From: Phallusia mammillata
Taxonomy: Eukaryota
Direction of reading: 5' to 3'
Length of the DNA stretch: 64,000 nt
Assembly (NCBI GenBank): GCA_965637545.1
Contig: OZ281494.1
Coordinates: forward strand, 11,284,001 to 11,348,000
The translations under genes and the position numbers were made by a program. Below are positions 9,881 through 15,800 of the stretch, piece by piece (positions within the stretch are counted from its first letter, which is position 1; every line of letters begins with the position of its first letter). The notes below the pieces were generated by a model, which was not told where the DNA came from, ran no database searches, and saw only the letters and a program-made list of their open reading frames with translations.

Positions 9881-12800
9881 ATGGATGGTACAGGTGGACC
9901 AAATTGTGCAAATATATCAGATGCTGCTGCCTTGGTCAGGAAAAACCTACAACAGGACAGAGAAACAATTGATTTAGCCACACAACTTAATATTACTTCT
10001 ATATGTAAGTGATGTAGGCTCTTGATTTAAACTAAAAAACATGTATATTCATGTAAGAGTTGTATTTCAGATTCAAGTGTAAGTAGTGGATTTAGCAAAG
10101 ATGATTACCCTACAACTGATGCTGCAAATTTTCCAGTAATTACTAATGTGCGCAGAGTGCCGCTGCCACCAGAATTGGTGGAACAGTTCAGCCGTATCCT
10201 TTAAAACTTGATGTTTTGCACATGTTAACATTACTAAAAACATTTAAAACGATGCCTACAAATTAAATACAGAATAGTTAAATGTTTTAATTGTATTTAC
10301 AATAAGAAATTGTTTAGTCTAGAAGTGCTTGTATAGTGCAAAGTATATGTACAGTTCTACTTCCATCCATTTTCTTAACCATTAACCTGAACCTACTTAA
10401 GACATGCAATGTAACTGCATCATTGGTGTTTTCCCACAAATTGGAAGAGCTTGGCTAACAGTGGATTCAGATATCTTTGTGTGGAGATACATTGATGGGG
10501 AAGATCTGGCATATTTTGATGGACTTTCAGAAACAATTTTAAGTGTCGCGTTGGTGGAGCCCAAACCAGGCATTTTTCGTGAACATATCAAATATCTGCT
10601 TGTGCTTACAACTGCTCTTGACGTGGTTCTGCTTGGAGTCAGCTTTGCAGATGATGGTATGCTATTTCTTTTTGTTCGGTCACCATTTAGTTTTGAGGTA
10701 TTACTACTTCAAACGTCCATAGTACATCACTGAGATGCCTTTTTTGATAGTTTATTATTTTATTTTAAAATAAAATCAAACCTACTCTGAAAACACTTGG
10801 GTGTCGATATTTTTAACAACCTTGTTGAAACAGAAGTTTTTTTTTCTTTTTGTTGGAAAAAAACTTTTTTTGTTTCTGCAGACATTAATGCTGAAATGCA
10901 CCTCCTGCCTGATCCACTTTTTACCATTTCCTCGGATGGAACTTATTTATTACACACTGTTGGAACTAACAACGGAAGAATTTTTTGTGGTGGAAAGGAT
11001 GGGTGTCTGTATGAAATTGTTTACCATGTATGTTCTGTGAATAATAATTACATGACCTGATGTTCTTTGAAAAGTGTTTATATTTTAGGCTGGTGGCGGA
11101 TGGTTTAGCAGAAAGTGCACAAAGATTAATCATTCAAGAAGCAGATTTTCATTTCTTCTACCATCAGTTGTAAATGTTTGGCTTTCTGAAGAAGGTTGGT
11201 TATATTGGTTAAGTTTTATTTATTATCAATTTATTTGTATAAATGTGTATTACTAAATGTTTACATTTTTTGAATTGCAGACAGCCTATGTCAGTTATCA
11301 ATTGATGATACCCGGAACATTCTGTATACAAGATCTGAGAAAGGTTCAATTACTGTAAGTATTATAATGCAAAGCTGCAGACAATGCACACTCTTTCGAC
11401 CTATAAGGTCTCATCAGTGCAGCTGGTGACGAGAGATAGGTTGAAACAAGTATATATAAAACACAAGTAGTCCATCCCATTGTTACGCGATAGAGCCTCA
11501 TGGACGCCATTTTGTGTCCAAATTAATACAGCAGGTATAGGGAAAAACACATAAATTGGCTGATTTTTACAAACTGGAGGGTTTTAGCACAAAATTGTGA
11601 GGAAATATCAAATAAAACTTTTCGGTTCGAACATTTGAGCTTGATAATGCATGCTGAATGCAAGTATTTTAAGTTTCATAAAAAATATGCGGCAAAATTT
11701 ACATAAAAAGAGCAGTTTAGCTTGTAATATTACGTTGAAATGGTAGAACCCGAGAGTTTCATTCAATTTGGTGAATCACATTGGCGTTTAAGCTCTCCAG
11801 TTTGTAAATATCAGACATTTTATGTGTTATTTTCCTCTACCCACCGTATCATTTTGGACACAAAATGGCTCCATAGGCTTTATTGCGTAACAATAGGTTG
11901 GACAACTTGTGTTTTATATAGACTTTGGGTTGAAACAGTGTGCACTGTCTGCAGCTTATCATTTATTGTCTCGATGTTTTACATTTATATTAACAGCACA
12001 TCTGTGTTGAAAACACAAAAAATACTACCGAACTCAACACTTAGAATTTGTTGTTTTTGTCGAATGAAATTAGATTGCCTATTTGCAGAATTCTTATGCA
12101 CCAGCATACTTTTTCCAAAATTGTAACATTTAGATGTGGTTTTCATTTTTTTTCGGTTCAGGTATATGATCTGGGTGCAGATGGACAGGGCTTGGTATGT
12201 GTTGCCCACACTAGACTAGACGCCATCCAGAGAAGAGCTCGTGAGATTGCTTCAACTATTGCCCCATCTAACTTAAATGAGATCATCCATATTGCACCAA
12301 TTACACTCAGGGAGTCAAGACACCTTCATTTAGTTGCTGTCACCCAGGCTGGTATGTAGGATTTCAGCAAAGGTAATGGCTATGTTTTGTCAGCTTAACC
12401 ACTTTATTTTACAGGTGTACGTTTATACTTTATGACTTGCAACATAAACATGCTTGCAAGCAATGTTAATGGTAAATTAACTCCCCCACCTCGACCCACT
12501 GCACTGTATTTGGTTCATGTTCGCCTTCCACCATTTTTTACAAGTTCCTCATTGCAACGTCCTTCTTCAGTTCATGCTGCCCATCATAATGCAGGTAGTT
12601 TTATTGCAAGCTTTTATATATGCAACGCAAGTTTTTTATATACATCTACATTGCAGAGTAATATTTGTTGCATGCAAGATCTGTTAATGATAGCTACAAA
12701 CTAAAAGCATATGTTTATTGCCAGGTACACTGTTGCTTGCATCGCGCAGTGGAGAAGATGGATTTATTTGGTGCATCAACAACGACATGTATGCATTCGA

Positions 12801-15800
12801 AAAAAGTTTGAAAGAAGTGCAGGTGAAGTTTTTTAAAGCAGAATGTTAAGCAAAGCATCTTATGGATAGAAACTGCCCAGGTTAAAACATTAACATGGAG
12901 GTCAAAATTTGATCACAACAAAATTACACAAATGCCCCTGTATTAGAAGCTAAAGTTTCAGAGGATTTCAACTGCAATCTACTCATAACACATACACAGA
13001 AATAAATGTGAAACCGGAATATAACCAAGGTAGTGCAAGGTGTCTAGTAAAATCCACAGAGTCAGAATGTGCATTTCTCCAATGTATATCGTTTGTTCGC
13101 CGAAATTTGAATGCATCAAGCCAAAGACCCAGTCCACCTTTGTAATAATAACACAATAATTTCGTATGAAGCATATCTTTGTTTTATTACTTCAACAACA
13201 ATCTTTTTTATCAATGGAAAATACCTTCCAACAAATGCAGAAATGCAGAAGTCCTGTTCCAGACTTCCATATTCCCTTGTCCTTCTGTAGCTTTCAAGCT
13301 TGTTACCAAAGCAGCAATCAAGAAGCAGTGCCTTACTATCCAAACCACGTAGAAGACGAGAACTAGGCAAATTTTTAATGAAAACGTTTAGAGTTTAAAT
13401 GACCTATCCAAACACACAAAAATACCTCTTTTGTAGGGCCACCAAACGTCCTGATCGAAACTAAAGGCAAAAGCTTATTGTTAGGGATGATTTTATGACC
13501 TGATGTATGGTGTGCTTTTTATGAAATAGACTGGTGCAAAATTACCAATGTCATTTCACCAACTACCCAATAGAATACATTATTTACTCCATTACTTACG
13601 TTTTGTTCCGTGCTTCGAAAAATAATTTGTAAATAGTGAAGGCGAAATGGCAAACTGCCACTGCTCTCCTAAACTTTACAGAACAACTCATAACTGATTT
13701 TTGTTTTCGAAATATCAAACCAAATCAAAATATTATATCCCTGTGCGCTGTGAGGCCACTGAAACAGTTTGACGCGTTTTTCGACAAGACGAAACTAAAG
13801 TTTTGTGATTGGGTATTGAGGCGTAAAGTTCTCACATACCAACTTCGTTCTGCTTCGTATATTACAGTTAACAGATGCTATGTATATTGTGTTTACGTCA
13901 GTTAGCCATTTGGCTGGCTGAAATGTTACGACCATGTTCATAGTTACACGACTCCCCTAATGGCCACAATTTGCGCAAGGAAAACAAATATGTTGCAAAA
14001 AAACATGGAATTTCCTGTGTAAAGAGGAATTTAAAATATATACGTTGTGAAATGAGTTGTATGGTTTATGTACCCTTCTGCATGTGAAAGGTAAACATCC
14101 AAAAAATCTAGTTTGCTGGAAACGTTTTTTTGCATAGTTTCATGAGACCAATGAACAAAAAATATTTCCACCGCTTGAGTAATATTGGGATAAAATTTGT
14201 TGTGACCAGTAAAAATCAAGCCAATTTTTAGTTTACCAACTTCAACTTCGATTACAGGGAAGTTTTGAGTTAAATGGTCAATCGTGGGCAATCGCTGAAG
14301 TTCCTTCTCCACTTTCCCCCCTCTCTATAGCAGCTATCCCACCCGGAACAAATCAATCACTTCCTCCAGATCCTCCCATCCATATTATCCAGCACATCCA
14401 GAAACCACCAGAGTACGTCGTCATAACATCACAGGTGCTTACATTCAACACACGGTCATTTCCAGCTTTAATGTGCGATAAAACGTAGAATTTTTTAGTA
14501 GTTTGCAATTTGTCACTGTACAAAAACACTTGTGTATTGTTTATGATCTATGGCTTCAGGGTGTTCACATGTTCAACAAACTTCGTCCTGTTGATCAACT
14601 ACGACATTTACTTGAAACGACCACAGATCCGGAATCCGACATAGTGGAGTCATTTTTTAGAGTCTACAAGGTACGTTAAAGTTTACTTTTGTAGATCTTT
14701 ACAGTTTCGAGATGAAAACTATCCCAAGTCAGTGATTCTTTAAGTAACGTGTACGAATTCGCAAGGATCGTCCTAGCAGCTTCACAGAGACCAAAGAAAA
14801 ACTACTCTAGTTGGCTATTTTACGTTGCCGTCACATCAGTTTCTTTCAACTTAGGGTTTAAACTTGTTGTTTTGAACTACAAATCACCTCCAAAAGCACA
14901 AGGGAATGTAAAAAAATTAGAAACGTTTCAATGCCACCAGTATAAGGTCTGTAAGGAATATCTGCGACATTCAACATTGAGATAACATTTTCTCAACTAA
15001 ATTGACTTGTTTTGATTTTTAGAACGGTGAAGCGCTATGTTGTTGCATCATAATTGCAATGTCGGCTGTCCCCACGGAACGTCACATAGCCGAGCGAGCG
15101 GTTGCGGTCTTCCTTCATCACGGAGGTCTTCCTTCACAGAAACCTCCCACCAACATCCAGGGACCTTCCTCTATTGCCTCTCCTCCCGGATTTCCCACTC
15201 TCGCTCCCATGTCTCCCATTGGAGGAGCATTTGACCGTCAGCAGCCTCAGATGAGCATGATGCGAACGCCTGGCGGATGTAAGAGGTTTTTTCGTGTTTG
15301 TCGATTGTGCAAAGTGTTTTTTGAAGTCGTATTGGCCCCACAATGATTGACCCTGCATTAGCATGTGCTATTAGGTGATTGATCAAACAGAACACTAGTG
15401 CATGCAGTAAAACCAAGAAGCCTAGTAGAACAATGCAGTAAAATAGCGTACGACCGTTTCATATACATCCAGAAATCTTTTAGATTACCGTTCACAAAGC
15501 ATTTTGCCTATACGTCTAAAATTCTGATATTTCCATTGAATTTAGTGTTTTTAAACTTTTTATTGCAACAGCAAATTTTGCTTTAGCTAAGCAACCTTAA
15601 GTTTCATTATCTTGGATAAAACAAGCTTACAACGAACAGAATCCAAGCAGTAAACAAATGACAATTACGGTTCATTCACCCCCTCTCATTTTGATTTCAA
15701 ATGTATTTTTCCCATCTAGTGCCCGTTATCAGCACACCGATGCCAGGAGCCTCTACCATCCAACCACCAGTAAACAACCAACAACCATTTCAGCAATCTC

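What the first reader, a model, noticed from the sequence alone, without database searches (positions are those of the whole stretch)
12983..13691. Hidden four-exon antisense gene inside Nup155 intron 9
The ORF track shows only unrelated-looking fragments here. Three short canonical introns join four pieces into one 139-aa frame, with compatible phases at every junction (2,1,1) and intron sizes typical of the neighbouring genes. I do not recognise the protein. A nested gene opposite an essential nucleoporin implies convergent transcription through a shared template. The gene model comes from the sequence; novelty is inference.
Basis: partly seen in the sequence, partly recalled or inferred. 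Interest (0 to 1): 0.85.

Follow-up and report, generated by a model that had tools for sequence, protein, structure and literature searches.

The report
Real spliced antisense gene in Nup155 intron
A small four-exon gene really is transcribed and spliced backwards inside an intron of the nuclear-pore gene Nup155 of this sea squirt, exactly as predicted, but whether its 139-residue reading frame makes a protein is unproven, and two related genomes lack it at this position.

Summary
The four minus-strand exons (13691-13600, 13460-13426, 13362-13225, 13137-12983) give 420 nt, or 139 codons, with GT-AG at all three introns.

Assembled contigs of public runs that also carry spliced Nup155 show all three junctions as CT..AC joints. 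One 402-nt contig (X5) has all three. A second study (X1) has introns 2 and 3. RNA covers 12823-13853 only, and the remaining 400 nt of the host intron is silent.

From sequence alone the find was not beyond chance. In 32% of 709-nt tiles, free GT..AG chaining gives an ORF of 420 nt or more. Given the RNA-defined transcript, the ORF is unusual: 43 of 20,000 shuffles and 0.3% of genomic tiles reach it.

Evidence for a protein is otherwise absent:
- No Pfam, Atlas or 1.84-billion-protein hit to the exon peptides.
- Codon-position composition shows little of the pattern seen in Nup155.
- Hydrophobicity matches random ORFs of the same composition.

In two related genomes the same Nup155 intron is only about 330 nt and holds nothing similar.

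Verdict: a real, lineage-restricted nested antisense gene. It is probably a young orphan coding gene (about 0.55). A spliced antisense lncRNA is the main rival (about 0.35).

The parts
13600..13853 (-). Exon 1 of the nested transcript. The 5' UTR is 13853-13692 and contains one AUG-UGA mini-uORF at 13837. The CDS start ATG is at 13691-13689, and coding runs 13691-13600.
   Evidence: X1 contig 13600-13853 and X5 contig reaching 13748. ORF and upstream ATGs.
13461..13599 (-). Nested intron 1 (139 nt, GTAAGT...TTTAG).
   Evidence: Joint 13460/13600 with CT..AC ends in X5 only. X1's contig instead runs unspliced from 13426 to 13512 and stops there, which suggests an alternative 5' end or an unprocessed form.
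13426..13460 (-). Exon 2 (35 nt).
   Evidence: Piece 13426-13460 of the X5 contig.
13363..13425 (-). Nested intron 2 (63 nt, GTATTT...CCTAG).
   Evidence: Joint 13362/13426 with CT..AC ends in X1 and X5, two different studies.
13225..13362 (-). Exon 3 (138 nt).
   Evidence: Contig pieces in X1 and X5.
13138..13224 (-). Nested intron 3 (87 nt, GTATTT...CAAAG).
   Evidence: Joint 13135/13223 '(cut +2)', equal to 13137/13225, with CT..AC ends in X1 and X5.
12983..13137 (-). Coding part of exon 4, including the stop codon TGA at 12985-12983.
   Evidence: Contigs cover it in all four runs.
12823..12982 (-). 3' UTR covered by RNA contigs. It probably continues into host exon 9.
   Evidence: X7 contig 12823-13140, X13 contig 12844-13021, and an X5 contig running from host exon 9 through to 12916. 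There is no AATAAA or ATTAAA in this stretch, only the variant AATACA at 12944-12939.
12763..12768 (-). First canonical AATAAA after the stop on the minus strand. It lies inside host exon 9 and is the inferred poly(A) signal.
   Evidence: Its use is an inference and was not observed.
12725..12822 (+). Nup155 exon upstream of the host intron (exon 9 by count).
   Evidence: RNA joints 12591/12722 and 12819/14255, both '(cut +3)'. Sequence.
12823..14257 (+). Host Nup155 intron (1435 nt). The orthologous intron is 333 nt in L003 and about 329 nt in L001.
14258..14434 (+). Nup155 exon downstream of the host intron.

Best explanation
A real, independently spliced four-exon transcription unit lies antisense inside the 1435-nt ninth intron of Nup155.

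Shown:
- Mature RNAs exist with all three predicted minus-strand GT-AG introns removed.
- RNA coverage is confined to 12823-13853. The rest of the host intron is silent.

Inferred:
- Transcription starts near 13853.
- The first long-ORF AUG (13691) opens a 139-codon frame that crosses all three junctions and stops in the last exon.
- The 3' UTR runs on to an AATAAA inside host exon 9, so the two mRNAs would overlap tail-to-body by some tens of bases.

The unit is lineage-restricted. The same intron in two related genomes is about 330 nt and lacks it.

I judge it most likely a young orphan protein-coding gene. Its product would be a small, basic, Phe/Trp-rich hydrophobic polypeptide of the kind that T-rich non-coding DNA yields readily, possibly membrane-associated. 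The confidence of 0.55 is for the coding reading. That the spliced antisense transcript exists is about 0.95.
For: -: joints 13135/13223 (cut +2), 13362/13426 and 13460/13600 all have CT..AC ends. All three sit in one 402-nt X5 contig that also contains the ATG. Two of them sit in an X1 contig from another study.
- the same runs carry Nup155 exon-exon joints with GT..AG, so they are cDNA.
- there is zero coverage of 13854-14254 in all four runs, so this is not retention of the host intron.
- the 139-aa ORF is the longest in the 742-nt RNA-defined transcript. It is reached by 43 of 20,000 dinucleotide shuffles.
- it is reached in only 0.3% of 742-nt genomic tiles.
- only a one-codon uORF lies upstream, there is an in-frame stop upstream of the ATG, and the stop codon is in the last exon.
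- the intron position is conserved, but the intron is 333 nt and about 329 nt in L003 and L001. No tblastn or blastn trace of the unit was found there.
- PMC7005711: T-rich non-genic DNA readily encodes transmembrane-like segments in emerging genes.
Against: - No homologue of the exon-4 peptide among 1.84 billion representative proteins.
- No Pfam match even at E up to 10.
- No Atlas neighbour, with low recognition scores of 1216 and 1368.
- Codon-position composition shows little periodicity and has T-rich first positions (0.31 against 0.18 in Nup155). Its score on a simple position-specific model ranks at the 30th percentile of chance ORFs in the window.
- Hydrophobicity and the number of hydrophobic segments equal those of random stop-free ORFs of the same base composition.
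- The intron-1 junction is seen in one run only. X1 shows a form that starts or stays unspliced at 13512. That form could encode at most the C-terminal 66 residues.
- No translation data exist.
- The whole 139-aa product could not be searched or folded.
Confidence: 0.55

Rival explanations
1. A spliced natural antisense long non-coding RNA whose 139-codon ORF is a chance feature. Any function would come from the act of antisense transcription through the Nup155 intron, or from the 3' overlap with exon 9 and base-pairing with Nup155 pre-mRNA. No protein would be involved.
For: - No homologue, domain or coding-type composition.
- Peptide properties match random translation.
- The unit is absent from the orthologous intron of two relatives.
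- The 5' end varies between runs.
- The finding was selected because an ORF could be drawn, and among thousands of lncRNAs a few will carry such an ORF at a 0.2-0.3% rate.
Against: An ORF of this length is reached in only 0.2-0.3% of shuffles or genomic tiles of the same size. It starts at the first substantial AUG, spans all three junctions and ends in the last exon.
Confidence: 0.35
2. There is no gene. The four-exon frame is an artefact of freely choosing GT and AG dinucleotides in AT-rich intron DNA.
For: Such models can be built on either strand of this intron and in 32% of 709-nt tiles.
Against: The exact three junctions are present in transcript contigs of two studies, and coverage is confined to the predicted exons.
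Confidence: 0.02
3. It is a conserved four-helix, histidine-bearing heme- or metal-binding membrane protein. This is the reading of the other first-stage note on this stretch.
For: Four hydrophobic stretches (about 10-25, 43-65, 80-98 and 121-139) each contain one His.
Against: - Only one segment passes a standard 1.6 hydropathy threshold.
- Segment count and GRAVY equal those of random ORFs of the same composition.
- There is no family, homologue or Atlas neighbour.
- It is absent in relatives.
Confidence: 0.03
4. It is a transposable-element or retro-inserted fragment that happens to be transcribed and spliced.
For: The host intron is about 1.1 kb longer than in two relatives. One 16-nt inverted repeat, 12910-12925 with 14193-14208, brackets most of it.
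Against: - That repeat is at chance level, since 80% of shuffles reach it.
- There is no other copy of any part of the intron in the 64-kb window or in the related loci.
- There are no tandem or direct repeats.
- There is no Pfam transposase or RT signal.
Confidence: 0.05

Closest known systems
Nested antisense genes in host-gene introns. Examples recalled from general knowledge are OMG/EVI2A/EVI2B in the NF1 intron and F8A in the F8 intron. Other nested pairs were noted in this same genome by the scan.
   Same: An opposite-strand, independently spliced unit lies within a single intron of a larger, essential host gene.
   Different: It is very small, with about 1 kb genomic span. It has no recognisable protein family. 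It is not conserved at this position in two relatives. Its 3' end probably reaches a host exon, so it may be an overlapping pair rather than a strictly nested one.
De novo or orphan genes emerging from T-rich non-coding DNA (Vakirlis et al. 2020, PMC7005711).
   Same: The coding strand is T-rich (33% T). The product is hydrophobic with transmembrane-like stretches. No homologues were found, and it sits in sequence that related genomes lack.
   Different: De novo origin is not shown. No alignable non-coding precursor in a close relative was available, and no translation or fitness data exist.
Natural antisense transcripts and intronic antisense lncRNAs.
   Same: It is spliced, antisense to the host pre-mRNA and lineage-restricted. 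No conserved ORF was detected.
   Different: It carries an intact ORF covering 57% of the known transcript, which is rare by chance (0.2-0.3%).

Membership tests
Nested antisense intronic gene | A transcript on the strand opposite to the host, with its own splicing | tested here: met
   Three joints with CT..AC ends on the + strand, which is GT..AG on the minus strand, in contigs of two studies.
Nested antisense intronic gene | The whole transcription unit is contained in one host intron | tested here: inconclusive
   The CDS, the introns and the 5' end (up to 13853) lie inside 12823-14257. However, contigs run continuously to the exon 9 border and, in X5, into exon 9. The first AATAAA lies inside exon 9. 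Contigs carry no strand, so host pre-mRNA cannot be excluded for that boundary.
Nested antisense intronic gene | Own promoter, independent of the host | not testable with these tools
   Coverage ends at 13853 with no upstream joint or loose end. No 5'-end data such as CAGE or raw reads were available.
Protein-coding gene | The ORF in the mature transcript is longer than chance | tested here: met
   The ORF is 139 aa. It is reached by 43 of 20,000 shuffles and by 0.3% of genomic 742-nt tiles.
Protein-coding gene | Homologues or a recognisable domain | tested here: not met
   Exon peptides gave no hits in Pfam, in 1.84 billion representative proteins (exon 4 only) or in the Atlas. Sensitivity was limited to pieces of 30-50 aa. 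The spliced whole protein has no reference and was not submitted.
Protein-coding gene | Coding-type codon-position composition | tested here: inconclusive
   The correct frame scores better than the other two (-0.17 against -0.27 and -0.26). It is still negative and ranks at the 30th percentile of chance ORFs. The model was trained on only about 1 kb of Nup155.
Protein-coding gene | Evidence of translation or purifying selection | not testable with these tools
   No Ribo-seq or proteomics, and no genome of a close relative was reachable. No variant was seen in the CDS in the contigs laid.
Taxonomically restricted (orphan or de novo) gene | Absent from the syntenic position in outgroups | tested here: met
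   The same intron position, after ...LKE-x-x, is 333 nt in L003 and about 329 nt in L001. There are no tblastn or blastn matches to the unit in L001-L008. These relatives are fairly distant: Nup155 exons are 72-82% identical in DNA.
Taxonomically restricted (orphan or de novo) gene | An alignable non-coding precursor in a close relative | not testable with these tools
   No close relative is in the collections. The window's own genome is apparently not in the protein collection either, since there was no self hit.
Four-helix heme- or metal-binding membrane protein | Transmembrane helices beyond what the composition predicts, and conserved ligand residues | tested here: not met
   One segment reaches 1.6 against 0.73 expected. 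Three reach 1.0 against 2.4 expected. GRAVY is 0.22 against 0.28 +/- 0.26. With no homologues, conservation of the His residues cannot be shown.
Transposable element | Multiple copies, terminal repeats, or transposase/RT coding | tested here: not met
   and Pfam. Only the 64-kb window and eight foreign loci were searched, not the whole genome.

The most novel reading that the evidence does not exclude
This is a gene born de novo within an expanded intron of an essential nucleoporin gene. About 1.1 kb of lineage-specific intron DNA acquired a promoter, three introns and a 139-codon frame that is translated into a small membrane-associated protein. Its 3' end uses a poly(A) signal inside Nup155 exon 9, so the new gene and its host are coupled by a sense-antisense exon overlap.
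Probability: 0.2. Interest if true: 0.55.

Novelty: new member of a known kind. Interest (0 to 1): 0.32.

Why it matters
The result shows that a gene model drawn from raw sequence alone hit three real splice junctions, so the locus is a genuine transcription unit that ORF-only views miss. If the frame is translated, it is a compact, tractable case of a lineage-restricted gene inside an essential host gene, probably overlapping one of the host's exons. That would make it useful for studying gene birth and host/nested-gene interference in a tunicate. If it is not translated, it is one more spliced antisense lncRNA. Either way the kind of thing is well known and common in this genome.

Tried and rejected
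- Free GT..AG chaining as evidence: rejected, because the same can be done in a third of tiles.
- Pfam on exon peptides at E up to 0.1 and up to 10: nothing.
- Exhaustive HMMER search of the exon-4 peptide against 1.84 billion representatives: 0 hits.
- ESM Atlas on the exon 4 and exon 3 peptides: no usable hit.
- Rfam on 12600-14400: nothing.
- Tandem, direct and inverted repeats and self-BLAST of the intron: nothing beyond chance.
- Codon-position model: underpowered.
- Search with the exon-10 peptide for more relatives carrying the orthologous intron: no candidates.
- L002, L005, L007 and L008 do not reach the orthologous intron.
- Findings search by sequence: blank.
- Literature search for nested genes in ascidians gave nothing specific to this locus.

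Left out: any search, cluster look-up or structure prediction with the whole spliced 139-aa product. One protein-database search was left unused.

Full report
**The observation**

- The ATG is at 13691.
- The exons are 13691-13600, 13460-13426, 13362-13225 and 13137-12983, of 92+35+138+155 nt. They sum to 420 nt, or 139 codons plus TGA.
- The introns are 139, 63 and 87 nt. Their donors are GTAAGT, GTATTT and GTATTT, and each ends in AG.
- The frame is closed upstream by a stop at 13721-13719.

The host on the + strand is a Nup155-type nucleoporin. Its exon ORFs hit Pfam Nucleoporin_N at E 2.5e-27. The flanking exons were located by three-frame translation and by RNA joints. After resolving the 'cut +3' ambiguity with the sequence, the host intron is 12823-14257 (1435 nt), between exons 12725-12822 and 14258-14434. 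Eight upstream coding exons map in the window, and at least one more must carry the start codon, so 'intron 9' is consistent.

**Is the sequence pattern more than chance?**

On sequence alone, no. A dynamic-programming search lets an ORF jump up to three GT..AG introns of 40-200 nt. It builds ATG-to-stop models of 627 nt on the minus strand and 612 nt on the plus strand of this very intron. It reaches 420 nt or more in 32% of 709-nt tiles of the window, or 4% if donors must be GTA. Compatible phases and canonical dinucleotides are therefore cheap here.

**RNA evidence**

Sixteen public runs of one organism hold parts of 12850-13850, and ten of them are guessed to be RNA. I laid the contigs of four runs from four studies on 12000-15400.

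Three of the four runs (X1, X7 and X13) carry all five Nup155 exon-exon joints with GT..AG ends. X5 carries two of the five. All four runs are therefore cDNA.

The three predicted nested junctions appear as joints with CT..AC ends, which is GT..AG on the minus strand:

| Junction | Contig joint | Seen in |
|---|---|---|
| Intron 3 | 13135/13223 '(cut +2)', equal to 13137/13225 | X1, X5 |
| Intron 2 | 13362/13426 | X1, X5 |
| Intron 1 | 13460/13600 | X5 only |

- X5 carries all three junctions in one 402-nt contig (13058..13748) that includes the ATG.
- X1, from another study, carries introns 2 and 3 in a 368-nt contig. A separate X1 contig covers 13600-13853.
- X7 and X13 cover the last exon and the sequence downstream of the stop (12823-13140 and 12844-13172).
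- No run has any contig over 13854-14254. The coverage is therefore not retention of the host intron.

One nuance concerns X1. By bin arithmetic, its spliced contig runs unspliced from 13426 to 13512 and ends there. Intron 1 removal therefore rests on one run. A shorter form may start inside 'intron 1'. Its first AUG would be Met74 of the same frame, giving 66 aa.

Contigs carry no strand or end information. The strand follows from the splice dinucleotides.

**The 3' end**

Between the stop (12983) and the host exon border there is no AATAAA or ATTAAA, only AATACA at 12944-12939. The first AATAAA on the minus strand is at 12768-12763, inside host exon 9. X7's contig begins exactly at the first intron base (12823), which is a graph branch point. 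X5's contig joins exon 9 to the intron up to 12916. I infer that the nested RNA ends inside exon 9, giving a short sense-antisense exon overlap. Host pre-mRNA reads at that boundary cannot be excluded.

**Coding or not**

For coding:
- In the RNA-defined 742-nt transcript the 139-aa ORF is by far the longest; the next is 45 aa.
- It is reached by 43 of 20,000 dinucleotide shuffles and by 0.3% of 742-nt genomic tiles.
- Only an AUG-UGA mini-uORF precedes it.
- The stop is in the last exon.

Against coding:
- The exon peptides have no Pfam match even at E up to 10.
- The exon-4 peptide has no hit among 1.84 billion representative proteins.
- There is no Atlas neighbour, and recognition scores are low.
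- Codon-position composition shows little periodicity, with T at first positions 0.31 against 0.18 in Nup155. The model score ranks at the 30th percentile of chance ORFs. This test is weak.
- GRAVY and the number of hydrophobic segments are what random stop-free ORFs of the same base composition give. Only Trp is mildly high, 7 against 2.8 expected, p 0.02.

The 'four-helix, one histidine each' reading of the other first-stage note is thus not beyond chance. T-rich non-genic DNA is known to yield transmembrane-like emerging ORFs (PMC7005711).

**Relatives**

A search with a conserved Nup155 exon ORF led to foreign contigs.
- Two organisms reach the orthologous intron: L001 (ENA) and L003/L004/L006 (JGI, one organism). 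Their taxonomic identity is unknown.
- Their Nup155 exons are 72-82% identical in DNA and 41-73% in protein to the window.
- The intron sits at the same codon position but is 333 nt in L003 and about 329 nt in L001.
- Neither tblastn with the spliced product nor blastn with the intron finds anything in any locus.

The unit is therefore not an ancient nested gene. The window's intron is about 1.1 kb longer, roughly the span of the unit. No close relative was reachable, so frame conservation could not be tested.

There are no signs of a transposon. The intron has no other copy in the window and no repeats. The single inverted repeat is at chance level. Rfam finds nothing.

**Verdict**

The gene model is right and the transcript is real, at about 0.95 confidence. 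It is lineage-restricted and has no recognisable family. The ORF statistic and the base rates of orphan genes against lncRNAs that carry such an ORF by chance favour coding. The lack of any coding signature argues against it. I put a translated young orphan gene at about 0.55, a spliced antisense lncRNA at about 0.35, and the other readings at about 0.1 together. Nested antisense units and orphan ORFs are common in this genome and in animals generally, so interest is modest.

**Limits**

- The spliced 139-aa product has no reference, so it was never submitted whole to any search or fold.
- Only contigs were available, not raw reads.

Noticed in passing
window 13426-13512: In run X1 the contig with nested introns 2 and 3 removed continues unspliced 52 nt into 'intron 1' and stops at 13512. 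This suggests an alternative start or a partly processed form. Its first AUG would be Met74 of the same frame, giving a 66-aa product.
   Followed up: partly
window 12763-12822: The nested RNA's 3' UTR seems to run into Nup155 exon 9, where the first minus-strand AATAAA lies (12768-12763). That would make a sense-antisense exon overlap with the host.
   Followed up: partly
window 12823-14257; L003 11606-11938; L001 15980-16308: The same Nup155 intron is 1435 nt here but about 330 nt in two related genomes. The excess roughly equals the span of the nested unit (12823-13853).
   Followed up: yes
window 15058 and 15064: All four RNA runs read G and C where the assembly has A and G, in a Nup155 exon. 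Both are third codon positions, so they are probably synonymous polymorphisms, with the assembled individual carrying the rarer haplotype.
   Followed up: no
window 12861: A T>C difference in two runs (X5, X13), in the putative 3' UTR of the nested transcript. No difference was seen inside the 420-nt frame.
   Followed up: no
window 14031-14312 (minus strand): A 93-aa ORF lies antisense over Nup155 exon 10. It has no Pfam hit, and the RNA there is explained by the host exon, so it is taken as a chance antisense frame.
   Followed up: partly
window 12910-12925 and 14193-14208: A 16-nt inverted repeat (14 of 16 complementary) brackets most of the nested unit. Eighty percent of shuffles of the intron give one as good, so it is not evidence of a transposon.
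   Followed up: yes
window 46016 (+ strand): A 141-aa ATG ORF, the only uninterrupted ORF in the window longer than the nested gene's spliced frame. It was not examined.
   Followed up: no
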